A program made the translations under genes and the position numbers. This document shows, piece by piece, positions 31,024 through 48,884 of a stretch of 64,000 nucleotides of DNA; the stretch's first letter is position 1; every line of letters begins with the position of its first letter. The stretch is taken from positions 124,001 through 188,000 of IMG/VR virus record IMGVR_UViG_3300050120_000361. One strand, 5' to 3'. Under the pieces are notes generated by a model. The model was not told the origin of the DNA. It worked only from the letters and a program-made list of their open reading frames with translations, and searched no databases.

Positions 31024-31029
31024 TAGATA
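31024..31029 (+). promoter_or_regulatory. putative late promoter TAGATA (tube)
   Basis: CAATAGATAA, same as at the sheath gene. Confidence 0.55.
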
Positions 31030-31066
31030 ACAAACAGAAACAAGAACAATTTAAAAATCAAAAGAT

Positions 31067-31682: not shown

Positions 31683-31708
31683 TGGTTTCAGTCTCTTGCC
31701 TGAAACCA
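31683..31708 (+). terminator. hairpin after the tail tube gene
   Basis: TGGTTTCAG-N8-CTGAAACCA. Confidence 0.5.
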
Positions 31709-31725: not shown

Positions 31726-33402
31726 ATGGCAAAATTCGGCTACGACGACCACAACTCGTCATTGAATACAAACACTCTGAAGCTCTCGAACGTCTACACG
31801 AACTGGGGATACCTTTTCCTGAACGCGGATGAGGAGTGCCGGGCCCTGATGCAGGAGCTCGTTGACGAGGAGCACGGCGGCTTCGTGCTCGTCAAGCCCC
31901 AGGACTTCGCCCTGCACATGCTAGACCTGTTCTTCAACCTGTCGCCTGAGATACAGCCGCTTTTCGACGGCTACGACGCCATGCAGATAGCAGGAATGGA
32001 GCAGGTCTACAGGACCAATCCAAAGTCTATGGTAATGCGCCTGGCCGATGACCTAAGGGAGAACGAGTTCAACGGTTCGGGTCAGCGGTTCGCGGCTAAC
32101 ATTTACCCAATGACGCCTGAGGGCTTCTCTCAATGGCCGTCCGACTGGGCTTTTCCAATATACGTTGACGACAACATGCCAGGCGAAAATGCCGTGCATA
32201 TCATAAACGAGGTGATGGAGTCCTCAGACCCTGAAGAGTACGAGGAGTACTACTGCTACGGCGGAGACTTTTTCTACAAGCGCAAGGACAGTCCTAAGTA
32301 CTGGATGGACGAGGACGACGAGGCAGACGTGTCATTCGATACAATCGAGGAGATGAAGCAGTACATCAACAACGGAGGGTGGGAGGGCACCCATGCGCCC
32401 GAACCGACCCCAGAGGTAGAGGAGGTTGCGAGCGACGTGGACGAGCTGCCGGAAGGTGAAAATGAAAGCATTTGGAGTGAAAAGCGTAAAGCATTTATTA
32501 AGATAGCCCGGAATGGAGAACCTGGAGTTTGGGATGACGATCTAAATGTTTTTGTATTGACCGAAGAGTCAAAAAATGATACTGAGCCTGTTACAGCGGG
32601 AATAGTTGACAAGGCCTCTGAGGCCCAGCCTGAAATAAACTGGTCCGACACAAAGACGGGGATTTCCGAAAAGGAGGAGTACAGCGCTCTTGTCAAGAAA
32701 TTGGCTTTCGCCCAGCACAAGCTCGCCAAAACCAAGAATTCCTACCGCAAGCCTACTCTTGGAGCGCCGCGGAAGGCCCCTGTGAAAATGGAGCAGTGGA
32801 AGAAGGACGCTTTGAAGCGCCTTGAAGGAGAGGTGTCCAAGGCGCTTAAGGCCATAGACCGCTTTAAGTTCAATCACGCCGGTTTGCGTCAGGTCATGAG
32901 ACAGCTAAACATACCAGCAGCCTCTTGGAACGGAAGCGGGATGGTCAAGGAATGGGGCAATTGGACACAAGGCTACAAAATAAATGATGGCGGATGGTCG
33001 CCTGAGAAGGTTGACCTTTACCAGATAGGCAAGGAAAAATTCCTGAACCTTATAAAGACGCTTGAGGCCAAGGGCTTTGAAATCGACGTTGTAAGCGAAC
33101 CGAGCAAGGCTATAAACGGAGACAGTGTGGCATACTTCACCATAGAGCAGTACCATACTGATGAGGATTTGAAGGGAAACACAAAATTGAATGAGGACGC
33201 GCCTGTAAGCCCTTGGGCTTTGGCGGTCGGTCCAGCAGTAGTGCTTTCTGTAGTGGTAGCCTCAGTGATAAGAGAGTACAAGAAAGGCAAGGCTAAGGCA
33301 GAGGCTGGAGGCGTTAAGATGGACGGGGCCACCCGCAAGAAGGTGCTAGTCAACGCGCTTCAAAAGGCGATACTCGAGGTGCAGAAGGCGCACAACTCAT
33401 AA
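31726..33402 (+). CDS. KLSN-domain family protein 1 (multi-module, C-terminal TM helix)
   Basis: LKLSNVYTNW ... LFDGYD N-terminal domain shared with four other ORFs. Confidence 0.7.
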   Translation: MAKFGYDDHNSSLNTNTLKLSNVYTNWGYLFLNADEECRALMQELVDEEHGGFVLVKPQDFALHMLDLFFNLSPEIQPLFDGYDAMQIAGMEQVYRTNPKSMVMRLADDLRENEFNGSGQRFAANIYPMTPEGFSQWPSDWAFPIYVDDNMPGENAVHIINEVMESSDPEEYEEYYCYGGDFFYKRKDSPKYWMDEDDEADVSFDTIEEMKQYINNGGWEGTHAPEPTPEVEEVASDVDELPEGENESIWSEKRKAFIKIARNGEPGVWDDDLNVFVLTEESKNDTEPVTAGIVDKASEAQPEINWSDTKTGISEKEEYSALVKKLAFAQHKLAKTKNSYRKPTLGAPRKAPVKMEQWKKDALKRLEGEVSKALKAIDRFKFNHAGLRQVMRQLNIPAASWNGSGMVKEWGNWTQGYKINDGGWSPEKVDLYQIGKEKFLNLIKTLEAKGFEIDVVSEPSKAINGDSVAYFTIEQYHTDEDLKGNTKLNEDAPVSPWALAVGPAVVLSVVVASVIREYKKGKAKAEAGGVKMDGATRKKVLVNALQKAILEVQKAHNS

Positions 33403-33407
33403 GCATT

Positions 33408-34265
33408 ATGGAAAGACTCAAACTAAGTAATTTCTGGGAAGTATGGCCCGAGCTATGCGCCACAGAACCCAAGTTCAAGCCTTTTGAAATGCTCGCGAAC
33501 GTGTTCTCGACTTCGGACGGCAGGGCGATGCGGGCACAGCCGAAGGAGTGCACGGACTACCTGATGCGCATGTTCTCGAACTCGCAGCTTTTCAGGGGAA
33601 TGTTCGGCGGCTACACGGAGCGGGAGGCCGACACCATTGCCGCAATGGTCGCGGAGAACGGGGACGGCTTCAAAGCGCTTTCAGAAAGGCTCGCCAAAAC
33701 CTATGAGGCATGGACCGCGCTGGACGGGCCCAAGCGCACTACGGACGAGGACTTCAAGAAGTACCTGATACTGGTGAATGAAACCAATATGGCGCAGGAG
33801 GCTTTTGACAGGATTAACGCCAAGGCGACCAATGAAAAGCTTCGCAAGGACCACGTGTTCGCATCCAAGTGGCGAGCCGCAAGGGCCGAAATCAACAAGG
33901 CAGAACGCAAAACGCGCCAATTCATTCACAACACCCTGAACATCGTTAAAGGCGTAAGGTCATTAGGCCTGGAGGCATCCAAGTCGGAAACCACAGCCGT
34001 AAAGGGCTGGCACACAATTACCGACGGTTACTCTATATCCGAGGGCGATATAGAGCTGTACGGCGGCACGGGCGTGGAGAAGTATTCGGCTATACTGGCC
34101 TGGCTTAAGTCCAACGGATACGAGATAGAGTCGACTGAAAAGCCGTGGCGCTCAGGCAAGGGCATGCGCGCCAACATAAGAGTTAAGCCATGGCACGACG
34201 AGGACGCGCTGAAGGAGCGGCACAGGAAAACCGCGGAGAACATTGACAGATACATAAACGGTTAA
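33408..34265 (+). CDS. KLSN-domain family protein 2
   Basis: LKLSNFWEVW ... MFGGYT. Confidence 0.7.
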   Translation: MERLKLSNFWEVWPELCATEPKFKPFEMLANVFSTSDGRAMRAQPKECTDYLMRMFSNSQLFRGMFGGYTEREADTIAAMVAENGDGFKALSERLAKTYEAWTALDGPKRTTDEDFKKYLILVNETNMAQEAFDRINAKATNEKLRKDHVFASKWRAARAEINKAERKTRQFIHNTLNIVKGVRSLGLEASKSETTAVKGWHTITDGYSISEGDIELYGGTGVEKYSAILAWLKSNGYEIESTEKPWRSGKGMRANIRVKPWHDEDALKERHRKTAENIDRYING

Positions 34266-34293
34266 GGAACACGATACAACCAAAAACACAACA

Positions 34294-35886
34294 ATGGCAT
34301 TCAAACTTACCAACATATGGCAGCAGTGGTCCCAGTTCTGGGCGGCAGCCGAAAAGGAGGCGCCCACAGACTTCGAGAGACTTTCCAATTATTGGCAGCC
34401 TGACGGCACATACATGACCGAGGAGCCTAAGGAGGCTGTTGAGGGCCTGCTAAAGCTGCTCGCCGCGAGCGGAAGGCTCATAAACGTATTTGACGGCTAC
34501 GACCAGAAGGAAAAGGGCGGAATACTCGGCGCCTGGGCTGTCGAGGCCAACAGGCCCAAATTCATTGACGCCATATGCAAGTCTTTCGCCGATTACGTCC
34601 ATATTAAGGGCAAGTCAATAGTAGACTACAGCCACGCTTTCGCCAACGGGTTCGCAGACGATTACGCGCAGTTCCCTGAGAACGTTACAGAAACCACAAC
34701 TGGAGCGGATGACGGGAAGCGGTGCTTCACCGTTACAGGTCTTCCAGGCCTGACCTTCGAATTCGAGCAGAATGGTGAGCTCATAACCATAGTAGATGAG
34801 GTCGGTGACGATTTGGGGGACGCCTACGACAATGAGCTATTCAACACGATAGCCGCCCTGCGCAGGGCGGTACACCCAGAGGACAATGATACGGGGAACC
34901 CTGAACTACTTAAGGAACTGAACGCAATACACGCGCAGCAGAAGCCGGTTCCGGTTCCGCCAAGCGCCGTGCCTGACAAGTCGTCATCGGCCGATAAGGT
35001 TGCTGACTACCTAGGAACGGCAATGGCCAAGCACAAGAACTGCTACTTCGCCAAAATGAGCAAAGGCGTTCCACTGCCGGAAAGTTCGAGAATACCGGAA
35101 AGGATGCTCAAATGGGCGCTGTCCTGCTCGCTCCCTGAAAAGGGGGTTGATGACTTCAAAAAGGCTCTTAAGGCTATGGCGATACCCGGACTGCGCGTCA
35201 GCAAGGGGCCTTCCCGCGGGAAGAACGCTCCGGCGTACTACGTTGTTCAGTGCCCGATTGAGGAGACCAAGGTTGAGGCGAAGACCGACGTGATACACCT
35301 GGCGTCATACTCTGAGGGTTGGAGCAGCCTCGGCGAACAGGACATTGAATACTTCATGGACATATGCAGCCAGTTCCTCGCCGCCCCGGACAAAACAACT
35401 TTCTGGGACAGCCTGCGCTTCCAGATAACCAAGCTATTGCCGGGCGACGCTGAGGACATTGACCAGGCAGACATTGGTGAACGCATGGCCACAGTGAAGA
35501 CCCTGCTCCAGTACCTCAAGAAGGACCTGGCCTGGGACAAGAAGAACACCCGCGAGTACAACTCCAGGGCCAAGGCGATAGCTGACGGCAGCAAGGCCAT
35601 ATCCAAAATATCCGATGATGACATAGAGTACTTGGGAGACGCCGACAGGCCGATACTTGTCAAGATACTTACCGACTACCACCTCGGAAACCTCATAGGC
35701 AAGGTGAAGCCGAAGTCGAAAATAGTGATAGAGGCCCGCGACTACACCGAAACCGACAACTCAAACAACAGGTACACGTTCACCAAGACATACGTTGACG
35801 GCTACGTGTCAATAGACGGTTCGGAGACTGAATTCGAAAGAATACAGATTGGCTCGAGCGGCTTCGACCACTTCCCCGAGAGCTGA
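34294..35886 (+). CDS. KLSN-domain family protein 3 (multi-module)
   Basis: FKLTNIWQQW ... VFDGYD ... ANRPK. Confidence 0.7.
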   Translation: MAFKLTNIWQQWSQFWAAAEKEAPTDFERLSNYWQPDGTYMTEEPKEAVEGLLKLLAASGRLINVFDGYDQKEKGGILGAWAVEANRPKFIDAICKSFADYVHIKGKSIVDYSHAFANGFADDYAQFPENVTETTTGADDGKRCFTVTGLPGLTFEFEQNGELITIVDEVGDDLGDAYDNELFNTIAALRRAVHPEDNDTGNPELLKELNAIHAQQKPVPVPPSAVPDKSSSADKVADYLGTAMAKHKNCYFAKMSKGVPLPESSRIPERMLKWALSCSLPEKGVDDFKKALKAMAIPGLRVSKGPSRGKNAPAYYVVQCPIEETKVEAKTDVIHLASYSEGWSSLGEQDIEYFMDICSQFLAAPDKTTFWDSLRFQITKLLPGDAEDIDQADIGERMATVKTLLQYLKKDLAWDKKNTREYNSRAKAIADGSKAISKISDDDIEYLGDADRPILVKILTDYHLGNLIGKVKPKSKIVIEARDYTETDNSNNRYTFTKTYVDGYVSIDGSETEFERIQIGSSGFDHFPES

Positions 35887-35947
35887 TAGCGGAAAAAACG
35901 CAAAAGACAAAAACGCATAGATAGTTCATTACGCCGAACAGACGACA

Positions 35948-36358
35948 ATGGCGATAAGGATAAGAGACAAGACACAAAAACCCGTTGATGCTGGGGTTAG
36001 CAGAAAAGACGACCGCAATGGCCAGTCGCAACCCACCAAAGAAACCAACAAGGACGCACCTATTCCGGATGTCCGTAGCTTCAGAGAACAGGCCATACTG
36101 GTCATTAACACACTCGAGTCGGAGGGCATAGACCTGTACGACAAAGCAAGAACTCCAGGAATGTATTTGAAAAGGAGGGGGACCGCAATGGTGCCTGACC
36201 AACTAATTCAGAAAATTCTATCTGGGAACGACGACCAAGCATCGACTTTGAACGCGAAGCAGCCAACATCAACGGGAAACAATAGCGAGGCAAAGGCCGG
36301 CGGAGAGCAACTCCCGCCCGGCCTTGTCGCATTTCTGACAAAGAACAAGAAACCATAA
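35948..36358 (+). CDS. hypothetical protein
   Basis: + strand ORF preceded by TAGATA. Confidence 0.55.
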   Translation: MAIRIRDKTQKPVDAGVSRKDDRNGQSQPTKETNKDAPIPDVRSFREQAILVINTLESEGIDLYDKARTPGMYLKRRGTAMVPDQLIQKILSGNDDQASTLNAKQPTSTGNNSEAKAGGEQLPPGLVAFLTKNKKP

Positions 36359-36361
36359 ATA
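36356..36361 (+). promoter_or_regulatory. putative late promoter TAAATA
   Basis: CATAAATA upstream of the gp26-like gene. Confidence 0.45.
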
Positions 36362-36371
36362 ACAGCATAAC

Positions 36372-37373
36372 ATGTCAACAGAGAAAGACGAAATCAAGAA
36401 GCAAAAACTGGCCGAGCTCGAACAGCTTGAAAGCACCGCCAAAGGAACCGAACCGGAAGCAGCGCCAATCGAAACCGAGACTCAGCCCGAGGACGAGGAC
36501 GACAACATAGTGCGCATGGACGCTCCAAAAATGATTGACGGCTACCGCATACTCGCAAGGCCGAACATGCCATTCGGCGGCGCGCTGTACCCGCCGTCTT
36601 GGACCTTCGCCTACAAGTGCCCAATTTCCAAGCAGATCGCGAACTTCTCCACGCTCAACGAGCAGGACCAGCCCGCGATAGTGGCTGCCATCGAGGAACT
36701 GGTTAAGGCCTGCTTCGTGATACTGGACGAGAACAACGGACAGACAATAGACACTGGCGAACTGAACGACGGCGACAGGCTGTTCTTCTTCCTGCTCCTG
36801 CGCGAATTTTACCTGCACGACAAGCCCATCACGTACACCACAATAAGCCAGAACTGGCAGGAGCCCGTACAGGTAGAGCTGCTCGCCTCCAGGCTGAAGT
36901 ACAAGACACTCAGCGCCGGCCTTCTCGCGTGCTTTGACGGCCGCATATTCACGATACCGGTTAACGAAGAGTCCGAGCCGATAGTGTTCCGCGTCCCTAC
37001 TTTCAAGGCTTCTGGCAAGGTGTTCCGGCACATAGTCAAGGTGTACCGAGACAGCCAGAACGCGGACGAGACAGAGAGCAAGAAGATGCTTGACGACGAG
37101 TCGTTCAACAAGCAGTTCCTGCTGGTGGCGCCGTTCCTTTTCGTTACCGGCAACGAGACAATAGACGCCCTCAAGACCAAGTTCAAGAAGATACAGTACA
37201 ATGAGGACCTACTCAACAGCTACCTCACGGTGATAAACAAGCTCAAACTGGACAACATGGAGCGCATCGCCTACACGTACAAGGGCTCTGAGGAGGAGAC
37301 CCTGATGCGATTTCCCGGAGGATGGAAGAACATGTTTATCGATAACCAGGCTTTCGGAGGAATATTCGACTAA
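36372..37373 (+). CDS. baseplate hub assembly / tail assembly chaperone, gp26-like
   Basis: ELNDGDRLFFFLLLREF and FRVPT motifs; upstream of the tape measure gene. Confidence 0.55.
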   Translation: MSTEKDEIKKQKLAELEQLESTAKGTEPEAAPIETETQPEDEDDNIVRMDAPKMIDGYRILARPNMPFGGALYPPSWTFAYKCPISKQIANFSTLNEQDQPAIVAAIEELVKACFVILDENNGQTIDTGELNDGDRLFFFLLLREFYLHDKPITYTTISQNWQEPVQVELLASRLKYKTLSAGLLACFDGRIFTIPVNEESEPIVFRVPTFKASGKVFRHIVKVYRDSQNADETESKKMLDDESFNKQFLLVAPFLFVTGNETIDALKTKFKKIQYNEDLLNSYLTVINKLKLDNMERIAYTYKGSEEETLMRFPGGWKNMFIDNQAFGGIFD

Positions 37374-37376
37374 GAT

Positions 37377-37725
37377 ATGGGGGCCGAAGGAGGAAAAGAA
37401 GACAGCATTCCCTACCTGGTCTGAACTCTACTCGGCGAGCAAAATCGACTGGAACAGCTACTACGAGTCGGCTATAATACTGTCCGTAAAGAGCCACAAC
37501 AGCTTTGAGCAGATAGAGAACCTGGAGTTCTTTAAGTTCAATTTGCTGATGAAGTACCTGAATATATACATAGAGAACGAGAACAAACAGCAACAAAGCC
37601 CCGAAGACGCCGAAAACAAGAAGGACGAACTAATGCAGCAGTCCGCCAAGCACATGGCGGAAGCCAAGAAGAATATGCCGAAAGCGCCTAAGATGCCGAC
37701 AATAAAAGCACCAAAACTGAAGTAA
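37377..37725 (+). CDS. gp51-like baseplate hub assembly protein; 5' end unresolved (needs a +1 shift or non-AUG start)
   Basis: Frame open from 37306 to 37725 reads YYESAIILSVKSHNSFEQIENLEFFKFNLLMKYLNIYIENENK; first canonical start (TTG 37543) lies inside the conserved-looking region. Confidence 0.5.
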
Positions 37726-37735
37726 AAACACGGAA

Positions 37736-39565
37736 ATGAGCAGACTGAACAACCTCAACGAAGCGGTAATAGACACCACCAAATTCACAGGAAATGGCGG
37801 CGGTGACTTGAACATCAGACTCGCTAAGAAAGGCGCTGGAAAGTCCCTGCTTGACGACATTGAGGACGAGGACGCCGGCGCATTTGCGCCCCTTTTGCCT
37901 AACGACATTGTAGACACAAAGACAATAGCGCAGAGGCTCGCTGAAAAGAATGAGCAGTTGGCAGCCCAAACAGTTAAGGACACGAACAGGGCCGCCGAGC
38001 TTAAGGCGCTGATGCAGCTCAGGCAGAAGAAGCGCCCCGAGATAAGGCACCAGAAAACCGAGAAACAGGACCTGAACGCACAACTGCTCGACAGAACCGA
38101 TGCCGAGGAAATGCAGCTGCAGCTGCAGAACAGGCAGTTGATACAGGACTACACCGAGGCAACCGGCAACCGGCTCCCTGAAGACACTGAAATGGTGGAG
38201 ACCGTGGAGCAGATTGAGGAGGCGCTTGACGAGATACCGACAGGCGACAAGGAGGTCACGCTCGCGGACTTCGACATCGTTCCGACACCAATCCGCAAGG
38301 ACAAGACGGGCTACACAAAGACCCTCGTAACCATAAAGAAGGGCTCCGTTCCACAGGAGATGAGCGCGCTCGCCACTGAGGTTAAGAAGCTGTCCAAGGG
38401 CGTGATAAGGCACCGCATAATGGACATGCGCACCATAGCGAACACCAACAAGACGCAGCTGCGCGGGTCTGATTTAAAGCTCGGCCTCGTGTCAATAAAC
38501 TTCAAGCCCGACGGCGAGAGCCGCGTCAACAAGGGCACCAGGTTCATAGTGTCCGTTCCGGAGGACTTCCAATCCTCACGGGACGTTGTCGTGTACATAC
38601 AGGAAAGCCGCGACAAGACGATACTGGTCCTGAAAGGGAACACTTTCTCCAACTGGCCGACAATGCAGGAATTCCTTGCCGAGGCCATAGCGAATTACTA
38701 CCAGTACGGGTTCGCTTCAACCAAGACCATGCTCAAATCCAACGGCATAAGCAATCCGCTCCTTGCCGTGGTTAAGTCGGTTTCATCCTCTGGGAGATAC
38801 ACGGTCGAGCCGAAGACGGACGCCGAAGGGCGCATCGAGCAGCTAACCATAGAGAGCAAGGGCACTGACAACCAGTGGCTTCGCGTCGTGGTGCTCGAGG
38901 GGCAGCTTGCTGCGACATACAAGGTCAAGTGCCGTTCCGAGATTGACACCAATTGGTCAGTGGACATAAACAACCCAAAAGGGCATCCTCTCACCATACT
39001 GGACCTGAACGGGGACAAGTTCATAGGCATACTTGACAAGCTTTACGCGAAACAGGACTGGGGAATGGACTCTGGTGGAAGCAGGGAATACTACATGCTT
39101 GCCAAGCTGACCTACCGTGCGCTGAGGGACGCGTTCGTCAGGATGTGGACTATAGTGGATGAGCCGGAGACCAACGCAATAGGCCTGGTCATTGGCGGCA
39201 CGCTTTCGCAGAAGGACACCGCAAAGGACATACCAGGCTCGTACGCCGCGGAGGGCATTATAGGCAAGACCAGCCATTTCGACTACTTCATACTGACCTA
39301 CCTTGCGGTGCAGGAACTGGGCGGCGACAAGCGCAATCCGCAGGAGTACATCACCACGGACGAGTACCATGAAAAGTACAACATAGCCAACAGGGGCAGG
39401 TACCAGGACAGACCCGCTACCATTCTCAAGAAAGAGGGCGAAAAGCGCAACTACCACGCAAGGGTGTACAAGTTCCAGCTCGAATACGAAATAGCCGGCA
39501 GCAAGCACAAGCTTGTCAACAGCTCATTGGATGCCATACTCGAAGAGAGCGGCCTGCTCAAATAA
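37736..39565 (+). CDS. hypothetical protein, possible head-internal protein
   Basis: 609 aa; N-terminal NLNEAV; charged coiled-coil N-terminal half. Confidence 0.6.
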   Translation: MSRLNNLNEAVIDTTKFTGNGGGDLNIRLAKKGAGKSLLDDIEDEDAGAFAPLLPNDIVDTKTIAQRLAEKNEQLAAQTVKDTNRAAELKALMQLRQKKRPEIRHQKTEKQDLNAQLLDRTDAEEMQLQLQNRQLIQDYTEATGNRLPEDTEMVETVEQIEEALDEIPTGDKEVTLADFDIVPTPIRKDKTGYTKTLVTIKKGSVPQEMSALATEVKKLSKGVIRHRIMDMRTIANTNKTQLRGSDLKLGLVSINFKPDGESRVNKGTRFIVSVPEDFQSSRDVVVYIQESRDKTILVLKGNTFSNWPTMQEFLAEAIANYYQYGFASTKTMLKSNGISNPLLAVVKSVSSSGRYTVEPKTDAEGRIEQLTIESKGTDNQWLRVVVLEGQLAATYKVKCRSEIDTNWSVDINNPKGHPLTILDLNGDKFIGILDKLYAKQDWGMDSGGSREYYMLAKLTYRALRDAFVRMWTIVDEPETNAIGLVIGGTLSQKDTAKDIPGSYAAEGIIGKTSHFDYFILTYLAVQELGGDKRNPQEYITTDEYHEKYNIANRGRYQDRPATILKKEGEKRNYHARVYKFQLEYEIAGSKHKLVNSSLDAILEESGLLK

Positions 39566-39575
39566 ACAAAATCAG

Positions 39576-39893: not shown

Positions 39894-39912
39894 CGGGTAC
39901 GCCCCGCGTTTT
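39893..39912 (+). terminator. possible short intrinsic terminator
   Basis: GCGGG-TACGC-CCCGC followed by GTTTT. Confidence 0.35.
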
Positions 39913-40088
39913 GCCCCAAAAACGGCCAGTTTAATTATGGAGAAAAAACGTTAACTCAGTAGAAGAATATATAGCTGTGTGGAAATAAACGAACCAAATC
40001 TGGTTAATTTTCCCACAAACCAATCGAAAATGAGGTATTTGGGTCCTACGGTCAGCATAGAAGAAAATTTCAATCAAATCGGCACTTT

Positions 40089-43000
40089 ATGAAATCAGCC
40101 GCCCTTGAGCAACCAACGCAAGTAGACATGGGCTTCTCGTCCATGGTTAACATGCTTGCTCAAATGGGCAAGGAGGAGAGGCAGCAGAGCGGAGTGCTTG
40201 GTTCAATACTTGAACGCGCCACGGAAATCAAGGTTTCCGTAACGGATGCGTTCAAGTCTTTCTCATTCGACAGGACTCAAAAATTCAACGTTTACCAAAA
40301 CATTCAGACAGCCCAGCACAAGACAAACAACTGGCTTGAGGCGCTCTTCATAGAATTGCTTTCGATACGCAAGCACGTCGTTGGCATAGAGTCCGGACAG
40401 GAGGGCATGAAGCCCAAGGCAGAAAAGATGCAGAGCGGCAGACCCCTCGACTACACCGAAACCTTCAAGAAATCAAACGACCATCTCTCGGCAATATCCG
40501 CAAACACCAAGTCAGCGCTCAAATTCCTTGAGGGAATAGCCAATGGCAAAAAGGTCGAGGCTCCCAAGGCCGGACACAAGGTTGGGGAGGAAGAGGATGA
40601 GGGCTTCCACGACACCAAAAAGAAGGTGAAGGGTTTCTTCAATGTGGCCGAGTTCGCCAAATCAATTGCGATACTGAACGCGAACATAACCAAGAAAATG
40701 ATAAGCGGGCTCGGAGCGTTCGAAAAGGCCTACGCGAGCCTTCTGGAAATGCCTGAAAAGAAGATGAAGACATTCACTGATGGGACTACCAAGTTCGGTT
40801 CAGTAATGGAGAAACTCTCCAAACAGATAAAGCCCGCCGCGATAACAATAGGCGTGCTTTCCGCTGCGTTTGTAGCTTTGAGCCTGTCTGTGACCAATCC
40901 GATATTCATTGTCGGTATGGCAACAATAGGCCTGTTCGTCACGCTCGTAAAAAGGTACGGCGGCGACAAGGACGCGGACAGGGGAATGCTGAAATTCGCT
41001 GAAGGCATAGGGATACTAACGCTTGCAATGGGCCTGATGCGCTTTGTGCAATGGGAGTCCGGTGCCAAGATGCTGGTATTCATTGCTGGACTCGGTCTGG
41101 CTATGAAGCTCTACATGAAACCCGCGGAGACTTCGGGAATGTTCAAGTTCGCGATGGGTATAGGCATCCTTACGGTTGCCATGGCCCTGATGAATTTCGT
41201 GGACTGGTCCTCAGGGGCCAAGATGCTGATATTCATTGGCGGTCTCGGACTGGCTTTGCGGACCTTCAGCGGTTCCGGCGCGAACGGCGGGCTCGGCAAG
41301 CAGTTGCTAGCTTTCGGTGAGGGGCTCGGCATAATGGTTCTCGCGCTCGTTGCTTTCAACTACATAAACTTCACTTCGGTCCTGAAGATGATAACCTTCG
41401 TGGCGGGGCTCGGACTCGCCCTCAAGCTGTTCGGAGAAGACAAGGGCGGCCTAAAATCCCCACTGCTCTCGTTTGCGTTCGGCATTGGATTGATGGTTCT
41501 TGGGCTGCTCGCGTTCGCTGAGATACCGCTCACGGCCATAATGAAGATGCTTACGTTCATTGGCCTATTGGGCCTTGAGCTCAAGCTTTTCTCCAACGGG
41601 GACGGCAAGTCGCCGATGCTTCAATTCGCAATGGGTTTGGGCATAATGGTTCTCGCCATGTATGCCATGAATGAGCTTCCGTGGGAGGCTCTCGGAAAGA
41701 CTTTGCTGTTCCTGGGCGGTCTCGGACTGGTTATGAAGCTGTTCGAAGGCGGCTCGGGCGCCGATTTCCTTATGATGGCAGGCGGCATACTGGTAATAGC
41801 CGGAGCCCTTTGGGTCTTCAAGAAGATAGGCTGGACCATGGCGGACGCCCTGATACTTGGCGGCACGATAACCATACTCGGAGTGATAGTGGCCGCTGCA
41901 GGAGCCCTAGCTGAGGTGATAGTCCCTGGAGCCATTTCAATGGTGGCTATGGGTGTTTCACTCGCGCTGTTCGCGCTCAGCCTGTGGGCAATATCCAAGC
42001 TTACGATAGACTACGAGTCTATAGCCAAATTCGGGGTGGCCGCTCTCGGCCTTACCACGATGATGGCCCTGATAGCTCCGCTAGCCGCTTTGGGCGCGAT
42101 AGGCGCTGTCCTGTTCCTGCCGATAGCCGCCGCAGCCCTTCTGGGTGCCGGCTCACTTATGCTAATATCCAAAGTACGGAATTATGATACGAAAAACTTT
42201 GCAGACGCGGTATTCGACCTCACATGGGGCTTTACCAAAATTGCTCCATTCGCTGCTCTTGGTGTCATTGGGGCTACTCTTTTTCTACCAATTGCAGCAA
42301 GCGCTCTCCTTGGAGCGGCAGCGCTCAAAGCAATATCGCTACTCGCTTTCGACCAAAAGGCAATCACAGCCTACGGGGTTGGCGTCAACTCACTGATCGG
42401 AGCCCTGGACAACCTGGGCATAATACAGGTCACTCGGACCGCGGCCAAGTCGGTGCTGCTGCTGCCAATATTCGCCGCGGCGACATTGGGAGCGCTCGCG
42501 CTTAAGGCAATGTCTGAAATGGACCTGAATGAGGGAAAGGTGAACCTGGCGGCCAAGCTAATAGACAGCTTCTCATCATCGATGATTTACACCATACTCA
42601 GGAACAAGGACAGGTTCGAGAAGGCGATGCCGGGAATAAACGCATTGGCCAAGCTTATGGGAATATCCTCGGACGTCGCCAAGGCGATAGGCATGATGGC
42701 CAACATGGAGTTCGTTGAGCATGGGGTCAGGAACGGGAAGCTGTACATCAAGTCCGTGCGCAAGCTGAACCCCGCGGACATGAAGCGGGTGGGGGAGAAC
42801 CTGGCCGTAATGCTCCAATGCCTTATCGAGCCTTTGACCATTCTCGGCTCTGACACGGCAACGTTCAACATAGGCGGCAGGAAGATAGCCAACCCGTTCA
42901 AGAACCCAAGCGCGCTAAAGGGGATAGACATGCTGTCCAGGGTTGGCGGTGCTTTCAAGCCATTAATGGACTCAATATCCGAGTACGCGAACCTGCCGCT

Positions 43001-43703
43001 CGCGTCAGACCCTAAGAAGCTTCAGCTGTTCACACAAAGTCTGATGTCGGTCATAAATACCATTATATGGGCGATAGACCGCGCGGCTACGATTAAGCAG
43101 GACATAGCTTCCAAGTCCATAACAACAATATCCAGGTTCGTAAGCTCAATGAAGGACCTTAACGTGGACAGGTTCAACGGCATAAACTCTGCGGTTGAGA
43201 AGTTCCTTGGCAACCTTGCGGATGACGTCAAGTGGAAGAAGATAGCCAGCAACATGAACATGCTCCAGCAGCAGTTCAAGGGTATAGCGTCCTCGATAAA
43301 CTCCATAGACATGGGCAAGGCCACAATGTTCGAGAAGAACGTGCGCAACCTGCTGGACAAGAACGCAGGCGAGAACCTCACCCTTGTGGTTCAGGAGCTC
43401 AAGGAGTTGTTCGGACTTGTTTCGGGGCAGTACAAGGCCCAGGCCGATGCTGCCCAGGCGCCAGCCAGAGACGACAAGAAGGACAATTCAATATCCTTCG
43501 GCTTCAACAACGGCCCACAGGACAAGAAGGCCGCTAAGGCCGTAGGGAAGCCCACTGAGCACGAGGAGATGACAGAGCTTATGAACCAAATAGGGATGGC
43601 GCTCGCGGCCATAGTTCAGCAGCTGACCGGCGTCAACGACAAACTCGCTGGCAAGTTGAAGGTTGTGACCACAACTGGAACGGCCAACAGCTTTTTACCG
43701 TAA
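40089..43703 (+). CDS. tail tape measure protein
   Basis: 1204 aa, Ala/Gly/Leu-rich helical, tandem hydrophobic repeats, downstream of hub/chaperone genes. Confidence 0.75.
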   Translation: MKSAALEQPTQVDMGFSSMVNMLAQMGKEERQQSGVLGSILERATEIKVSVTDAFKSFSFDRTQKFNVYQNIQTAQHKTNNWLEALFIELLSIRKHVVGIESGQEGMKPKAEKMQSGRPLDYTETFKKSNDHLSAISANTKSALKFLEGIANGKKVEAPKAGHKVGEEEDEGFHDTKKKVKGFFNVAEFAKSIAILNANITKKMISGLGAFEKAYASLLEMPEKKMKTFTDGTTKFGSVMEKLSKQIKPAAITIGVLSAAFVALSLSVTNPIFIVGMATIGLFVTLVKRYGGDKDADRGMLKFAEGIGILTLAMGLMRFVQWESGAKMLVFIAGLGLAMKLYMKPAETSGMFKFAMGIGILTVAMALMNFVDWSSGAKMLIFIGGLGLALRTFSGSGANGGLGKQLLAFGEGLGIMVLALVAFNYINFTSVLKMITFVAGLGLALKLFGEDKGGLKSPLLSFAFGIGLMVLGLLAFAEIPLTAIMKMLTFIGLLGLELKLFSNGDGKSPMLQFAMGLGIMVLAMYAMNELPWEALGKTLLFLGGLGLVMKLFEGGSGADFLMMAGGILVIAGALWVFKKIGWTMADALILGGTITILGVIVAAAGALAEVIVPGAISMVAMGVSLALFALSLWAISKLTIDYESIAKFGVAALGLTTMMALIAPLAALGAIGAVLFLPIAAAALLGAGSLMLISKVRNYDTKNFADAVFDLTWGFTKIAPFAALGVIGATLFLPIAASALLGAAALKAISLLAFDQKAITAYGVGVNSLIGALDNLGIIQVTRTAAKSVLLLPIFAAATLGALALKAMSEMDLNEGKVNLAAKLIDSFSSSMIYTILRNKDRFEKAMPGINALAKLMGISSDVAKAIGMMANMEFVEHGVRNGKLYIKSVRKLNPADMKRVGENLAVMLQCLIEPLTILGSDTATFNIGGRKIANPFKNPSALKGIDMLSRVGGAFKPLMDSISEYANLPLASDPKKLQLFTQSLMSVINTIIWAIDRAATIKQDIASKSITTISRFVSSMKDLNVDRFNGINSAVEKFLGNLADDVKWKKIASNMNMLQQQFKGIASSINSIDMGKATMFEKNVRNLLDKNAGENLTLVVQELKELFGLVSGQYKAQADAAQAPARDDKKDNSISFGFNNGPQDKKAAKAVGKPTEHEEMTELMNQIGMALAAIVQQLTGVNDKLAGKLKVVTTTGTANSFLP

Positions 43704-43716
43704 CACTGTCGCGGGG

Positions 43717-43722
43717 TAAATA
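43717..43722 (+). promoter_or_regulatory. putative late promoter TAAATA
   Basis: At the start of the 255-nt intergenic leader. Confidence 0.45.
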
Positions 43723-43958
43723 CAATCAAGGGTATCGCAAAATGCCAATATATCAAGTTAAAATGAACAAAGCCATGTAAGCATGACGTACCTTGCCACA
43801 AGCGAATAGCAGTCAGTTGTAGCTACCTGTTGCATATCGTATTTGGGCATAAGTTCGAGGAATAGAGACGGCCTGTAAGCCATTGAACCTGGGAACGAGA
43901 AGTCATCATTGGAGTGCGTGCATTACTGCAGTTATTAACAATTTAACCCATTAACCAA

Positions 43959-45452
43959 ATGGCAATTACAAGAAAAGACTACGTCCTCAAAGTGACGGAG
44001 CAAATGGCCGAGAACGCTAAGGCGGTTCTTTCCGGACACGGACTGAAATCGCAGTTCATCAACCTTATTAGCAAGCGCCCGGACATCATCGCCAAATTGG
44101 CCGTGTTGGCCTGGTCATCAAAGACCGCGTCTAAAGGCGGCAAGGCTCTTCAGAAGAAGAACAACTTCAAAATCACGGCTTACGCCAACTTCGCGAACTT
44201 CAACTTCGGCGCGCGCCAGGACGTTGAAAAATTCATGGAGAAACTCACGCCGGCCGACCAGGCTTCATTCAGCAATGATGAGAACATTTTGACCATTCTC
44301 GCAATGGGCGACACCCCTGTGGGCATTGATTTGGAGGCGGACATCGTTAACGGCAAATCCGTTGCGCTGCCTTTCGCCAAGTCTGTTATGAAACAGTACA
44401 AATTCGGTACTGGGGCTTACATCGTGGTTATGTTCGGCGACTCTTGGCTCCAGCCAAAAGAGGAGAAAACGGCGAAATCAAAAGCAAAGGTTAACAGCCG
44501 CCTACAGGCCCGCCGTTCACCCGCCAAGGTTCGCGCCGAACTCGTTAGCAAGGCGAACGCCAAAAAGGCCGATTTGAAGAGCGATGCCATCAAATTGAAG
44601 AACGCCGCCGCCAAGCACGAAGGCGCCCTGCAGCAGTTCAACAACCTCGCGGCAACTGTTGGCGCTCCTGAAGGCGCCTCAGCAAAAGAGGCATTGGCAG
44701 CAATCAAGGCCTACAACACGACAAACAAGAAATTGATTGCCGGTCTGAGCTCTGACAATCTTCGCCAATACAACAAGGCTGCACGCCTCTACATGGGCGG
44801 CGAGAAAGCGAAAGCCAATTCGATACTTGCGAAAATCGGCATTCCCGAGCTTACTGACCTGGTTCGCGGCGGAAACAACGTAAGCACAGACAAAATCGTT
44901 GCTGCCCGCAAGAAGGCATTGACCGCCAAAATCAAGGAAATTAGCGCCGCAAATGAGGAGCTGCTTGTTAAGGTTGCTGAGTCAACCAACAGCAAGTACA
45001 AGGCGGACACCAACTTCAAGATCCGTGCCAATGTGGCAAAGATTAAGGAGCTTCGCGCGCGCATTGCATCTTTCAGCGAATTGACAACAATCGGCGCCGT
45101 TAAGAACAAGGCTTCATTGCTCTCTAAGGCGAACGCGCTTATTGCTGCTAATTTGAAGGCCGGACAGTCTGTGCAGGCAGCGCTGCAGAACGCGCTTTCT
45201 AAACTTCCGGTTGACGACGACACTAAGGAGCAGATACGCCAGCAGGTCATTGAGGGCGTTGCCCAGCAAGTGCCCATGCAGTACGCGGTCCAGCAGGCGA
45301 TACAGAACGTTGACCTACAGGCCGACGATGAGGTGGAAGCGGCCGAGGAGGAAATGGAAGATGATTTGGGATTGGATGACGATCTTGAACTGTCTGACGA
45401 CACCTCACTGGCAGGCAGCAAGTCTATTCAGGACATTCTTGCAAACCTCTAA
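43959..45452 (+). CDS. Lys/Ala-rich basic protein with acidic tail
   Basis: Composition; own upstream TAAATA and downstream terminator. Confidence 0.65.
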   Translation: MAITRKDYVLKVTEQMAENAKAVLSGHGLKSQFINLISKRPDIIAKLAVLAWSSKTASKGGKALQKKNNFKITAYANFANFNFGARQDVEKFMEKLTPADQASFSNDENILTILAMGDTPVGIDLEADIVNGKSVALPFAKSVMKQYKFGTGAYIVVMFGDSWLQPKEEKTAKSKAKVNSRLQARRSPAKVRAELVSKANAKKADLKSDAIKLKNAAAKHEGALQQFNNLAATVGAPEGASAKEALAAIKAYNTTNKKLIAGLSSDNLRQYNKAARLYMGGEKAKANSILAKIGIPELTDLVRGGNNVSTDKIVAARKKALTAKIKEISAANEELLVKVAESTNSKYKADTNFKIRANVAKIKELRARIASFSELTTIGAVKNKASLLSKANALIAANLKAGQSVQAALQNALSKLPVDDDTKEQIRQQVIEGVAQQVPMQYAVQQAIQNVDLQADDEVEAAEEEMEDDLGLDDDLELSDDTSLAGSKSIQDILANL

Positions 45453-45482
45453 CGGCATTAAATTGGTTTAGTTTAATTAGTT

Positions 45483-45530
45483 CCAGCATTCAGAATGCCC
45501 CGTCGCCGAAAGGTGTCGGGGCTTTGCTGG
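45483..45530 (+). terminator. intrinsic terminator with GAAA tetraloop
   Basis: GCCCCGTCGCC-GAAA-GGTGTCGGGGC then TTT, with outer CCAGCA/TGCTGG pairing. Confidence 0.7.
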
Positions 45531-45547
45531 TAAAAAGCGGTTTCTAA

Positions 45548-46399
45548 ATGGCGATAAAACTTAGCAATGTATGGGAAAACCTCGACTCGTTAATAATGTG
45601 GATGGTCGACGATGCGCAGAAGGCCCGGTACAAAAAGATATATGATACCAAGACCGGTAAGCTGCTCATAAGCGAGATAGACTTTCTGAAGACAGTTTGT
45701 CAGGACTTCGTTGATGTTGTAACCTTCAGGTTCCTGTTCGACTACCCAACGAACGTTAAGAAGGGAATACTTGAAGCCATAAGGTCTGACATGGACCTTG
45801 TGGTTAACAAGCTAATGGTTGACCTGTACGGCCAGCTGAACGTGCACGACGTTAAGTTCCAGGGCGCCGATGAGGTTGAGGACATTGAAAGGTACCGTGA
45901 GCTTGACGGGCGCATAAGCGCCAACAGTTCCGCGCAGGAGGACATGCGGTGGATTAGGGATTGGGTCTTCGCCAGCATGGACGAAACCGACAAGCCCGAC
46001 ATAAACGCGCTTGAGGCCATTTACCGCAAATGGCTAAGAGTGACCGGGTACAGCAACGACTACGCCATGGTATCGCCCGGCGAAATGCTGCTTGAGCTCG
46101 AGCAGGCCAATGAGCCCATAGTGTCGCTTCAGGACCAGGTAGAGCGCGCCGTCAACAAGAGCCAGGAAAAGTACAAGTGGCTTGAGGAGCAGATACCGCA
46201 GCTTAACGGATACACTGACGCGGAGGCCCTGTGGCTCATGCAGCTAAAGGGTGAAATGTCCCAGGCCAACGAGGCCGAGCGGCGCGAACTTGACAGGATA
46301 TGGGGCGCTTTCCTCGAAGATACGGACTACGTAAATACAGCACAGAACCTGAGCATTGACGAGCTAATCGCCGTGCTCTCAACCAACGAAAAACAATGA
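45548..46399 (+). CDS. KLSN-domain family protein 4
   Basis: IKLSNVWENL ... FLFDYP. Confidence 0.65.
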   Translation: MAIKLSNVWENLDSLIMWMVDDAQKARYKKIYDTKTGKLLISEIDFLKTVCQDFVDVVTFRFLFDYPTNVKKGILEAIRSDMDLVVNKLMVDLYGQLNVHDVKFQGADEVEDIERYRELDGRISANSSAQEDMRWIRDWVFASMDETDKPDINALEAIYRKWLRVTGYSNDYAMVSPGEMLLELEQANEPIVSLQDQVERAVNKSQEKYKWLEEQIPQLNGYTDAEALWLMQLKGEMSQANEAERRELDRIWGAFLEDTDYVNTAQNLSIDELIAVLSTNEKQ

Positions 46400-47064
46400 G
46401 CTTACAGCCAGGAACATCATCCCTTACGGCGCCGCAGCCGCAGGTTGCCCAATTGGAGCTAACCTTCGCGGGCCCGCTCGTAAAGGACTCGTACGTTTCC
46501 ACCAAGAACGACCTCCCAAACCTTCCAGTGGCCACGAGCTATGAGCAGAAGATGGTATGGGTGAAGGCCGATAAGTCATGGTACTACATATCGAGCGGCG
46601 ACGGTTCGCTGCTATCGCACTGGACGCTTCTCGTTGGCAGGATGACCATAGAGGCTTACGACCCCGCAAACTCCCAGGGGTATGCGGCGGGCGACACCGT
46701 ATACCAGAACGGAATAATCTACAAGGCCGTACAGGACGCGCCGCAGGGCATTGCCCCGCAGAACGGCGCATACTGGCTGATAATAGCGGGCGACGGCGTG
46801 GCGTACCGCTTCGTGTTCCAGAACGTGTCGTCCTTCGCCGTGGTTACGCCCGTAAAGAACCCGCTGTTCGAGACTATAATAGGCGACATACAGATGTCCG
46901 GTTCAGACTTCGTGATAGGCGACGACGGAATGGTGGAGATACTCAACCAGGAGATAGTGCAGGCATTCGTGCAGAAGGACGACTCTGAAACCGGAAAGTA
47001 CAACGTGTACTTCGAGACTAACGGAACGCCATTCGCTATGAGCGGCGCCATCAATGTGAAATAA
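46396..47064 (+). CDS. virion appendage protein with CBM5/12-like carbohydrate-binding module
   Basis: YAAGDTVYQNGIIYKA...P...AYW motif. Confidence 0.6.
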   Translation: MSLQPGTSSLTAPQPQVAQLELTFAGPLVKDSYVSTKNDLPNLPVATSYEQKMVWVKADKSWYYISSGDGSLLSHWTLLVGRMTIEAYDPANSQGYAAGDTVYQNGIIYKAVQDAPQGIAPQNGAYWLIIAGDGVAYRFVFQNVSSFAVVTPVKNPLFETIIGDIQMSGSDFVIGDDGMVEILNQEIVQAFVQKDDSETGKYNVYFETNGTPFAMSGAINVK

Positions 47065-47139
47065 TACGGCACGTCCTAACATTGCCGCTGTTTCAGGATA
47101 TAGATAACATCGATAACACACCAATAACAGATAGATGAC

Positions 47140-47850
47140 ATGGGCGTAAAAGCACAACCACCACAGACGGGCACTCTCAAACTCTCCAATATATGGCAGA
47201 ACCTCAGGCAGCTGATAACAGCGGCCAAGAAGACCGATGTCAAGATGCACTTAAAGCTGCTTGACGGCGCCACGTTCGATAACATGAAGCGTCCCGAGTA
47301 CCAGGCATTCGTGCTGAATACCGCGATTGACCTTTTCATGCTCAGGCCGGGACTGTTCGGATACACGCTGAACGAGATTGAGATTGTCACCGCTGGCGTA
47401 AGGGCCAACAGGCCCAAAACAGTTGCCGACATGAAGCGAAGGCTCGACGGCCAGTACAACGACAATGGGGTGTTCTTCGGCGAGCAGCCGAAGTTCACGT
47501 GGAGGCGCGGCCCAAGGATAGCCGACCAGTCAGCGAGCTTTCCGCCCGAGCGCAGGCCGTACAACTGCTACATAGAGAGCCTGCCCGGATACCACTTCAC
47601 CAAGGACGGCTTCATAGGCGGGTTGTTAAACCACGGCTGGGGCTTCACGAACGTGGGGAACGAGTGGTACAGCTCCATAGACGCATCGCCAAAGAGCATA
47701 TCGTTCGCCAGGATGTTCGAGTTCGGTGACGACAAGGAAGCCCGGAAGAACTTTGAAAAGCTCTTCGTGAGCATAATATACGGCTGGAAGTTCCCAGAGT
47801 TCAGGGAACAGATAATGGCCAAAAAATCACTAATATCATTGAAACTGTAA
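47140..47850 (+). CDS. KLSN-domain family protein 5
   Basis: LKLSNIWQNL ... LFGYT ... ANRPK. Confidence 0.65.
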   Translation: MGVKAQPPQTGTLKLSNIWQNLRQLITAAKKTDVKMHLKLLDGATFDNMKRPEYQAFVLNTAIDLFMLRPGLFGYTLNEIEIVTAGVRANRPKTVADMKRRLDGQYNDNGVFFGEQPKFTWRRGPRIADQSASFPPERRPYNCYIESLPGYHFTKDGFIGGLLNHGWGFTNVGNEWYSSIDASPKSISFARMFEFGDDKEARKNFEKLFVSIIYGWKFPEFREQIMAKKSLISLKL

Positions 47851-48880: not shown

Positions 48881-48884
48881 GACA

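What the first reader, a model, noticed from the sequence alone, without database searches (positions are those of the whole stretch)
31726..47850. Five proteins share one N-terminal domain fused to different cargo: candidate capsid-loading address tag
Seen: ORFs 31726, 33408, 34294, 45548 and 47140 carry LKLSNVYTNW, LKLSNFWEVW, FKLTNIWQQW, IKLSNVWENL and LKLSNIWQNL at or near the N-terminus. About 60 aa later they carry LFDGYD, MFGGYT, VFDGYD, LFDY and LFGYT, then a helix ending TNPK or ANRPK (ANRPK is identical in 34294 and 47140). The roughly 100-aa domain is followed by largely unrelated C-terminal regions, and the genes sit in two clusters among late structural genes. Known: T4 internal proteins use an N-terminal capsid-targeting sequence, and phiKZ-like phages have paralogous head-protein families. 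Inference: a constant docking domain loads variable effectors into the head for ejection into the host, forming a polymorphic cargo system. I do not recognise the domain.
Basis: partly seen in the sequence, partly recalled or inferred. Interest (0 to 1): 0.88.

Follow-up and report, generated by a model that had tools for sequence, protein, structure and literature searches.

The report
New shared N-terminal domain, jumbo-phage gene family
Five late genes of an uncultivated jumbo phage share a previously undescribed helical N-terminal domain of about 110 residues joined to interchangeable C-terminal modules; related phages show the same fast-changing gene array next to the tail tube gene, which fits a common docking handle for variable virion cargo, but that function is untested.

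Summary
All quoted motifs are present, and the N-terminal motif occurs only in these five ORFs (0.18 expected by chance). Leave-one-out HMMs recover each member at E 1e-5 to 1e-9.

The domain is real and new:
- AlphaFold2 on 23 family N-domains gives a confident all-alpha fold (pLDDT 91).
- It has no relative in PDB, BFVD, Pfam or PHROGs.
- A profile search of 1.84 billion proteins found 14 foreign members, all with the domain at the N-terminus.

The window is part of a 208-kb contig, a jumbo myophage distantly related to Sphingomonas phage PAU. Cluster 1 (31726-35886) lies between the tail tube gene and a probable tape measure gene. In six related metagenomic phages the same slot holds 3-5 members. 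They differ in number, length and C-terminal modules while the tube stays 72-86% identical. Cluster 2 (45548, 47140) has conserved orthologues in fixed synteny.

C-terminal modules are shuffled, often very acidic, match no known enzyme family, and a subset ends in a conserved hydrophobic tail.

Best reading, by inference only: a docking domain that recruits variable accessory or ejected proteins into the virion. Whether the site is head or tail is unresolved. The capsid-specific claim has no direct support.

The parts
31726..33402 (+). Family member 1 (558 aa), a mosaic. It has a 17-aa leader, the N-domain (aa 15-138, nt 31768-32139), and a second domain shared with P0007/P0015-type members. 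It also has an alpha/beta module (aa 317-483) shared with 33408, and a conserved hydrophobic helix plus Lys-rich tail (aa 485-558).
33408..34265 (+). Family member 2 (285 aa). N-domain aa 1-120. The C-terminal module is shared with 31726. Orthologues are P0014 (35% identity, full length) and L016:5730-6515.
34294..35886 (+). Family member 3 (530 aa). N-domain aa 1-118 (FKLTNIW subfamily B). The acidic 412-aa C-terminal region has no match outside the genome.
45548..46399 (+). Family member 4 (283 aa). N-domain aa 1-119. It has conserved orthologues (P0005 and P0006, 50-53% identity) in fixed synteny. Its stop overlaps the start of 46396 by 4 nt.
47140..47850 (+). Family member 5 (236 aa). It has a 12-aa leader and the N-domain at aa 10-135 (nt 47167-47544). 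This N-domain segment was the query of the AF2 model. Its orthologue is P0008 (35% identity). It lies 4 nt upstream of 47855.
31067..31654 (+). Probable tail tube gene (195 aa), the conserved 5' border of the variable array. It is 38% identical to PAU gp92, which follows the annotated sheath, and 72-86% identical in related metagenomic phages.
31683..31708 (+). Stem-loop between the tube gene and the first family gene. It is conserved in position in L003 and L014, and is a possible attenuator or terminator.
35948..37373 (+). Conserved 3' border of the array: a 136-aa gene (46-56% identity in relatives; no homologue found in the PAU stretch examined) and a 333-aa gene (58-60% identity; homologue of PAU gp93).
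40089..43703 (+). Probable tape measure protein (1204 aa). It has central hydrophobic, Gly-rich repeats (aa 247-810; DNA copies 153 and 312 nt apart) and is a homologue of PAU gp97.
45497..45522 (+). GC-rich stem-loop in the 95-nt gap before 45548 (z -3.3 for the intergenic region).
46396..47064 (+). 222-aa gene start-stop overlapped with 45548. It is a homologue of PAU gp98 (35% identity) and has only a sub-threshold CBM_5_12 match.
47855..49709 (+). Two genes (341 and 274 aa) packed tightly behind 47140. Both are conserved in relatives (65% and 48% identity). Function unknown.

Best explanation
The five genes belong to a previously undescribed, clade-restricted multigene family of uncultivated jumbo myophages (PAU-related backbone, Bacteroidota-style leaders without a Shine-Dalgarno sequence). 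Each protein starts with a folded all-alpha domain of about 105-120 residues. Its signatures are K-L-[ST]-N-x-W at the extreme N-terminus, F-R-x-x-F-[DT]-G-Y-[TD]-x-x-E near residue 65, and in a subset G-Q-x-F-N-G-x-G-x-x-F at the end of the domain.

The most likely mechanism is that this domain is a common docking handle. It would bind one shared partner of the morphogenesis machinery and so recruit interchangeable C-terminal modules into the virion as low-copy accessory or ejected proteins. Those modules are acidic helical regions, a small alpha/beta module, and a hydrophobic-helix tail.

Shown here: the family, its fold prediction, its modular shuffling, its fixed genomic slot and its extreme turnover relative to flanking structural genes.

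Inferred only: virion incorporation, ejection, the identity of the docking partner, and whether the site is the head interior or the tail/tape-measure assembly.
For: 1. Real homology and one fold: leave-one-out HMMs, and AF2 on 23 N-domains with pLDDT 91.4 and pTM 0.79.

2. The domain is always N-terminal. In all 14 genuine foreign hits of the 1.84-billion-protein profile search it starts within residues 1-17, in proteins of 192-523 aa.

3. Fixed slot in a late structural operon. Three to five members sit between the tube gene and a conserved 130-aa/320-aa gene pair in L003, L008, L011 and L016, and directly after the tube in L010 and L014. All are co-directional with short gaps.

4. Hyperplasticity:
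- Tube 72-86%, sheath 58-69% and the 333-aa protein 58-60% identical, against array members at most about 36% identical and differing in number and architecture.
- The N-domain tree groups members that carry different C-modules.
- The hydrophobic-tail module is fused in 31726, P0013 and P0018 but stands alone in L016:4690-5109 and L010:4587-5306.

5. Where orthology persists, the C-terminal parts are as conserved as the N-domain (36-47% against 32-58%), so both parts are functional.

6. Precedent (PMC5694885). T4 internal proteins are targeted by N-terminal sequences. SPN3US/phiKZ head proteins, including paralogs gp53 and gp54, carry N-terminal propeptides of about 125 residues thought to act as targeting sequences. 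Those paralog families also vary in copy number between phages.

7. Stem-loops precede both clusters, which is compatible with lower expression than the major tube protein.
Against: - There is no direct evidence of virion association. No cultured phage has the family, so no proteome exists.
- The stretches of PAU and PTm1 examined (about 42 kb each, around the sheath gene) contain no member. The domain is therefore probably not needed for the conserved tail assembly pathway.
- No conserved protease site was seen at the domain boundary on inspection of the alignment.
- No C-terminal module matches a known effector or enzyme family.
- In L013 the array follows the terminase gene and lies next to an acetyltransferase and gyrB, not tail genes.
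- Many C-parts are very acidic (net charge down to -50), unlike the T4 internal proteins, which are basic (from memory).
- Cluster 2 members are tightly packed with their downstream genes (a 4-nt overlap and a 4-nt gap). This could instead point to a partner-specific adaptor or chaperone role.
Confidence: 0.4

Rival explanations
1. Non-virion accessory ('moron'-type) proteins. The N-domain binds a common host or phage cytoplasmic or membrane target. The variable C-modules diversify under an arms race, for example as acidic decoys, superinfection exclusion or lysis/assembly regulation at the membrane. They would not be packaged.
For: - Extreme turnover inside an otherwise conserved operon.
- A hydrophobic C-terminal helix with a Lys-rich tail in a subset (31726, P0013, P0018), which would place the N-domain at the cytoplasmic membrane face.
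- Very acidic, aromatic-rich C-parts.
- The L013 array lies beside an acetyltransferase and gyrB rather than tail genes.
- The family is absent from the PAU and PTm1 stretches examined, so it is dispensable for that part of the virion.
Against: - The genes are embedded without obvious own promoters in late structural operons in seven phages.
- Proteins made only late can act on a new host only if they are packaged.
- Cluster 2 members are conserved orthologues in fixed synteny with structural-module genes.
Confidence: 0.25
2. Peripheral tail or baseplate components. The N-domain anchors variable modules (adaptors for fibres, decorations or host-surface binders) to a common site on the tail, as the N-terminal anchor domains of receptor-binding proteins do.
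For: - Both clusters lie in the tail module, after the tube gene and after the probable tape measure gene.
- 45548 and 47140 are each followed within 4 nt or less by conserved genes, one with a sub-threshold CBM5/12 match.
- A conserved N-terminus with a variable C-terminus is the classic architecture of receptor-binding proteins (from general knowledge).
Against: - The C-modules are short (60-420 aa) and acidic. The single-sequence model of 47140 (low confidence) shows mixed helix and strand, and some members carry a membrane-type helix.
- None matches any tail-fibre or tailspike family in Pfam or PHROGs.
- The N-domain is a globular helical unit with no match to solved anchor domains.
- The giant fibre-like proteins of this phage lie upstream (888-26111) and lack the domain.
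Confidence: 0.15
3. Tail assembly chaperone-like proteins. Paralogs share a tape-measure-binding N-domain and differ in C-terminal extensions, analogous to the gpG/gpGT pair encoded between the tube and tape measure genes.
For: Cluster 1 occupies the tube-to-tape-measure interval. The N-domain is all-helical and about 110 aa.
Against: - Hypervariable copy number and C-termini are not expected of chaperones.
- Cluster 2 and the L013 array lie outside that interval.
- The PAU stretch examined has the same tube and tape-measure backbone but no member in it.
- Foldseek found no similarity to any solved structure, chaperones included.
- The genes are separate ORFs; frameshifting was not examined.
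Confidence: 0.08

Closest known systems
T4 internal proteins (IPI-III, Alt) with the capsid-targeting sequence (CTS)
   Same: Several otherwise unrelated proteins share an N-terminal element that, in T4, recruits them to the prohead core for later ejection (PMC5694885, PMC7697877).
   Different: - The T4 CTS is a linear propeptide of 10-20 residues removed by the gp21 protease. Here the shared element is a folded helical domain of about 110 residues whose N-terminus is part of the fold.
- No conserved cleavage motif was seen, and there is no sequence relation.
- The genes sit among tail genes, and packaging is untested.
SPN3US/phiKZ head paralog families (family A, pfam12699; family B) with long N-terminal propeptides
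   Same: These are giant-phage paralog families whose copy number varies between phages. Family A members gp53 and gp54 carry N-terminal propeptides of about 125 residues proposed to act as targeting sequences, and their first 15 residues are identical (PMC5694885). The length and the N-terminal conservation resemble this family.
   Different: - There is no match to PF12699 or any PHROG and no BFVD fold match.
- The phage lineage differs (PAU-like, not Chimalliviridae).
- Processing and head location are unknown here.
N-terminal packaging signals of eCIS/PVC payloads
   Same: Diverse payloads share an N-terminal element that loads them into a contractile-tail tube lumen. The payload genes lie beside the tail structural operon (PMC10097599, PMC11495950).
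   Different: - PVC loading depends on the Pvc15 AAA ATPase (PMC11495950).
- No ATPase was detected among the neighbours scanned here.
- The phage tube lumen is expected to hold the tape measure protein.
N-terminal anchor domains of phage receptor-binding proteins
   Same: A conserved N-terminal attachment module with exchangeable C-terminal modules, located in the tail gene region.
   Different: The C-terminal modules here are not fibre- or spike-like and match no receptor-binding protein family. The N-domain fold is unrelated to solved structures.

Membership tests
T4-type CTS-bearing internal proteins | Short (10-20 aa) linear N-terminal propeptide | tested here: not met
   The shared element is a folded all-alpha domain of 105-125 aa. 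The N-terminal motif has pLDDT above 90 inside the fold.
T4-type CTS-bearing internal proteins | Prohead-protease cleavage site (hydrophobic-x-Glu) at the end of the targeting element | tested here: inconclusive
   The only semi-conserved Glu lies in the G-Y-[TD]-x-x-E motif within the predicted helical core. No invariant Glu column is seen at the domain boundary. The phage's protease and its specificity are unknown.
T4-type CTS-bearing internal proteins | Presence in the mature head and ejection into the host | not testable with these tools
   No cultured phage carries the family.
phiKZ/SPN3US head paralog family A (PF12699) | Match to Pfam PF12699 | tested here: not met
   No Pfam hit in the five window proteins or in 21 family members.
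phiKZ/SPN3US head paralog family A (PF12699) | N-terminal propeptide of about 125 aa removed at an A/S-x-E site | not testable with these tools
   The length of the shared N-domain is comparable, but processing needs mass spectrometry.
Receptor-binding proteins / tail fibres | Fibre- or spike-type C-terminal domain recognisable by tail-fibre families | tested here: not met
   No Pfam or PHROG tail-fibre match. The C-parts are short and acidic, and some carry a hydrophobic helix.
Tail assembly chaperones (gpG/gpGT type) | Encoded between the tube and tape measure genes | tested here: inconclusive
   True for 31726-35886. Not true for 45548, 47140 or the L013 array.
Tail assembly chaperones (gpG/gpGT type) | Structural similarity to solved chaperones | tested here: not met
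   Foldseek against PDB: best E 1.9, TM at most 0.28.
Polymorphic toxin systems | C-terminal toxin domain with an adjacent immunity gene | tested here: not met
   No toxin or enzyme domain in any of 21 members. The array genes follow one another without small interleaved partner genes.
eCIS/PVC payloads | Loading by a dedicated AAA ATPase (Pvc15-like) encoded in the locus | tested here: not met
   No ATPase family was detected among the neighbouring genes scanned.

The most novel reading that the evidence does not exclude
A folded helical domain of about 110 residues, unrelated to any described targeting sequence, acts as a general loading handle. It would program the packaging of interchangeable protein modules into jumbo-phage virions (head interior or tail lumen alongside the tape measure) for ejection into the host. 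The tube-proximal array would then be a phage-borne polymorphic cargo locus evolving in an arms race, and the domain could be used to package heterologous proteins.
Probability: 0.3. Interest if true: 0.85.

Novelty: new variant of a known kind. Interest (0 to 1): 0.6.

Why it matters
How giant phages select the many minor proteins they package and eject is poorly understood. It has been studied almost only in T4 and the phiKZ/SPN3US group.

This family offers a sharply defined, confidently folded and sequence-novel domain that marks a fast-evolving set of late proteins in a different, uncultivated jumbo-phage lineage. If it is a loading handle, three things follow:
- It gives a testable rule for cargo selection.
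- It gives a catalogue of candidate ejected proteins, including strongly acidic ones and one type with a membrane-type helix.
- It gives a possible tool for packaging foreign proteins.

Even if the proteins are not packaged, the array is a clear example of a hyperplastic locus held at a fixed position inside a conserved tail operon.

Tried and rejected
- Megablast of the region and tblastn of 34294, 47140 and P0016 against 50,697 phage records: no match.
- Pfam and PHROGs on the five proteins, on 21 members and on neighbours, including lenient thresholds: nothing useful.
- The search for homologous proteins with 33408 returned only itself. With the 21-sequence alignment it returned only two already known members.
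- Single-protein scans with the tube gene found only the source contig and one 6-kb relative, L010.
- Single-sequence AF2 of 47140 was poor (pLDDT 39).
- P0012, a 1355-aa hit with 15 matched stretches, is an ankyrin-like repeat protein and was rejected as a false positive.
- PAU (L002) and the first 42 kb of PTm1 (L006) contain no member. PAU gp89 at E 0.016 is not significant.
- The T4 late promoter TATAAATA is absent. The sigma-70 and terminator scans were not enriched over shuffles.
- PDB sequence and profile searches found nothing.
- There is no extended DNA identity between paralogs, so recent duplication or gene conversion is rejected.
- The rest of the 208-kb contig was not fetched. The 5-sequence profile search of the whole protein library returned no further member that had to come from this genome. 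Very divergent copies, such as the M-K-L-G-T-L type seen in L003 and L013, cannot be excluded.


Full report
**What is there**

The window is all + strand in this region. It belongs to IMGVR_UViG_3300050120_000361, a 208,538-bp viral contig. The window corresponds to roughly contig positions 124001-188000.

A regular expression for the N-terminal motif hits exactly these five among 832 six-frame ORFs. Shuffles give 0.18 on average and 2 at most.

Pairwise BLASTP is weak (23-33% identity) but always collinear from the N-terminus. Leave-one-out HMMs recover each omitted member at E 2e-5 to 1e-9, with the next-best window ORF at E 0.1-1. HMMs from 23 and 29 family sequences still find five members and nothing else in the window.

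- The TNPK/ANRPK motif is in three of the five proteins.
- 31726 and 33408 share a C-terminal module of about 165 aa.
- The identifiable neighbours are tail genes, not head genes.

**The phage and the neighbourhood**

Megablast finds nothing in 50,697 phage records. The 906-aa tail sheath (26948) is 31% identical to that of Sphingomonas phage PAU. It is more distantly related to those of the Tenacibaculum, Chryseobacterium and Lak phages.

Synteny with PAU is clear:

| Window gene | PAU homologue |
|---|---|
| 24327 | gp88 |
| sheath 26948 | gp90 |
| 31067 | gp92 (the likely tube, 38% identity) |
| 36372 | gp93 |
| 40089 | gp97 |
| 46396 | gp98 |
| DNA polymerase 49942 | gp105 |

40089 (1204 aa) has a central block of hydrophobic, Gly-rich repeats (aa 247-810) and repeated DNA copies 153 and 312 nt apart. 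I read it as the tape measure protein.

Relative to PAU, the five family genes are insertions into this backbone. Three lie between tube and gp93-like. One lies between gp97-like and gp98-like, and one lies after gp98-like. The PAU stretch examined contains no member.

Leaders are A-rich with no Shine-Dalgarno sequence. Together with the relatives, this points to a Bacteroidota-type host. That host assignment is an inference.

**The domain**

Pfam, PHROGs and PDB sequence searches give nothing for the five proteins.

A profile of the five N-domains was searched against 1.84 billion representative proteins. It returned only 20 hits at E<=1e-3:
- four are the window's own proteins;
- one (P0012) is an ankyrin-like repeat false positive;
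- one (P0010, 293 aa, starts at residue 1) was not printed but appears to be encoded at L010:3696-4574, where its N-terminus was read;
- the other 14 (192-523 aa) carry the domain starting within residues 1-17.

AlphaFold2 with an alignment of 23 N-domains gives a confident model for 47140 residues 10-134: pLDDT 91.4 and pTM 0.79. It has six helices, and the K-L-S-N-x-W segment scores above 90, so that segment belongs to the fold rather than being a free peptide.

Foldseek finds no relative in PDB or BFVD (best E 1.9, TM at most 0.28). The T/D-x-x-E after the invariant Tyr precedes a predicted helix by a few residues and may be a helix N-cap rather than a cleavage site. That reading is by eye.

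**The family in other phages**

Contexts of the foreign members, scanned with the HMMs, show two kinds of locus.

Locus 1 is a tandem array directly after the tube gene. Where the contig continues, it is followed by a conserved 130-aa/320-aa gene pair. Lengths are in aa.

| Phage | Tube identity to window | Array |
|---|---|---|
| window | - | 558, 285, 530 |
| L016 | 86% | 139 (tail module only), 187, 261, 462, 649 |
| L014 | 85% | 294, 198, 460, 251+ |
| L010 | 80% | 293, 240 (tail module only), 312+ |
| L003 | 72% | 206, 201, 523, 224 |
| L008 | tube not on contig | 289, 490, 333, 271 |
| L011 | tube not on contig | 208+, 501, 410 |

The flanks are 46-86% identical to the window. Array members reach at most about 36%, and mostly only in the N-domain.

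Locus 2 keeps orthologues of 45548 (P0005, 50% identity) and 47140 (P0008, 35% identity) in fixed synteny with the 43959-, 46396-, 47855- and 48885-like genes.

A more distant 171-kb contig (L013, GC 23%) has four members after its terminase gene, next to an acetyltransferase and gyrB.

**Modularity**

The N-domain tree has very long branches (median terminal branch 1.07 changes per site). It resolves subfamilies shared between phages, so the paralogs are old.

Members of one N-subfamily carry different C-terminal modules. Conversely, modules recur with different N-subfamilies. 31726 is a mosaic of four parts:
- an N-domain with a 17-aa leader, as in P0013;
- a second domain, as in P0007 and P0015;
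- the alpha/beta module of 33408;
- a hydrophobic helix plus Lys-rich tail that is 47-63% identical among 31726, P0013, P0018 and L010:4587-5306. A weaker 35-aa match (40% identity) lies in L016:4690-5109. In L010 and L016 the module stands alone.

In orthologous pairs the C-part is as conserved as the N-domain. Many C-parts are strongly acidic (20-26% Asp+Glu, net charge down to -50). None of 21 members matches a Pfam family. There is no extended DNA identity between paralogs.

**Expression clues**

The genes are co-directional with the neck, sheath, tube and tape-measure genes and have short gaps. 45548 overlaps 46396 by 4 nt, and 47140 ends 4 nt before 47855.

A stem-loop follows the tube gene in the window (31683-31708). 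Stronger ones sit at the same place in L003 and L014. Another precedes 45548 (45497-45522). This is compatible with lower expression than the major tube protein, but it is not proof. Promoter scans were uninformative.

**Interpretation**

A shared, folded, strictly N-terminal domain on otherwise exchangeable proteins implies a shared binding partner. Placement inside late morphogenesis operons in seven phages makes a morphogenesis or virion partner the simplest reading. Extreme turnover of the C-terminal modules points to a role at the phage-host interface.

Together these favour virion-recruited accessory or ejected proteins (confidence 0.4). The closest precedents are the T4 capsid-targeting sequence and, more closely in size, the propeptides of about 125 residues on SPN3US/phiKZ head proteins (PMC5694885). 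The N-terminal signals of PVC payloads are a tail-lumen analogue (PMC10097599, PMC11495950).

None of these is homologous to this domain. The defining features of each that could be tested here were not met, were inconclusive, or could not be tested (see the membership table).

The identifiable neighbours are tail genes, and the tail module with its hydrophobic helix would fit a tape-measure-associated ejection role equally well.

Rivals are:
- non-packaged accessory proteins that share a host- or membrane-directed domain (0.25);
- peripheral tail or baseplate adaptors (0.15);
- chaperone-like assembly factors (0.08).

**Verdict**

This is a real family, new in sequence and in predicted fold, with a striking genomic behaviour. 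The loading-tag mechanism is plausible but unproven.

Novelty: new variant of a known kind (paralogous late or virion protein families with a common N-terminal element). Interest: 0.6.

Noticed in passing
window 888-10010 (+): A 3040-aa ORF with internal repeats. Three segments (aa 91-205, 464-540 and 1442-1539) each match the same region of PAU gp99 (33-40% identity). It may be a giant fibre or decoration protein.
   Followed up: partly
window 49942-51474 and 53486-54757 (+): The family-B DNA polymerase is split into an exonuclease part (510 aa) and a polymerase part (423 aa), with two unknown genes (51514, 52466) between them. The same order is seen in the relative whose genes are listed.
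   Followed up: partly
window, all + strand gene starts (e.g. 26897-26947, 31015-31066): Leaders are A-rich and lack Shine-Dalgarno sequences. This fits a Bacteroidota-type host despite 53% GC. Related phages carrying the family span 23-50% GC.
   Followed up: no
window 40089-43703 (+): The probable tape measure protein has a series of hydrophobic, Gly-rich repeats of roughly 50 aa (aa 247-810), seen as DNA repeat copies 153 and 312 nt apart.
   Followed up: partly
window 35948-36358 (+): A 136-aa basic, low-complexity protein always follows the variable array in relatives (46-56% identity). No homologue was found in the PAU stretch examined, which also lacks the family. It is a candidate partner of the family.
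   Followed up: partly
L010:4587-5306: A gene carrying only the hydrophobic tail module contains an exact tandem duplication of about 72 aa. This is either a real duplication or an assembly artefact.
   Followed up: no
L014:170-952 and L014:1084-1575: In this close relative a 260-aa ORF of unknown function sits just upstream of the tube gene. The tube gene is called short (163 aa), although the open frame covers the full tube (85% identity over 190 aa). This may be a mobile insertion or simply a short gene call.
   Followed up: no
window 34545-34560 and 47403-47418: The identical ANRPK of 34294 and 47140 is encoded by an identical 16-nt string, GGCCAACAGGCCCAAA. The surrounding DNA is otherwise unrelated.
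   Followed up: no
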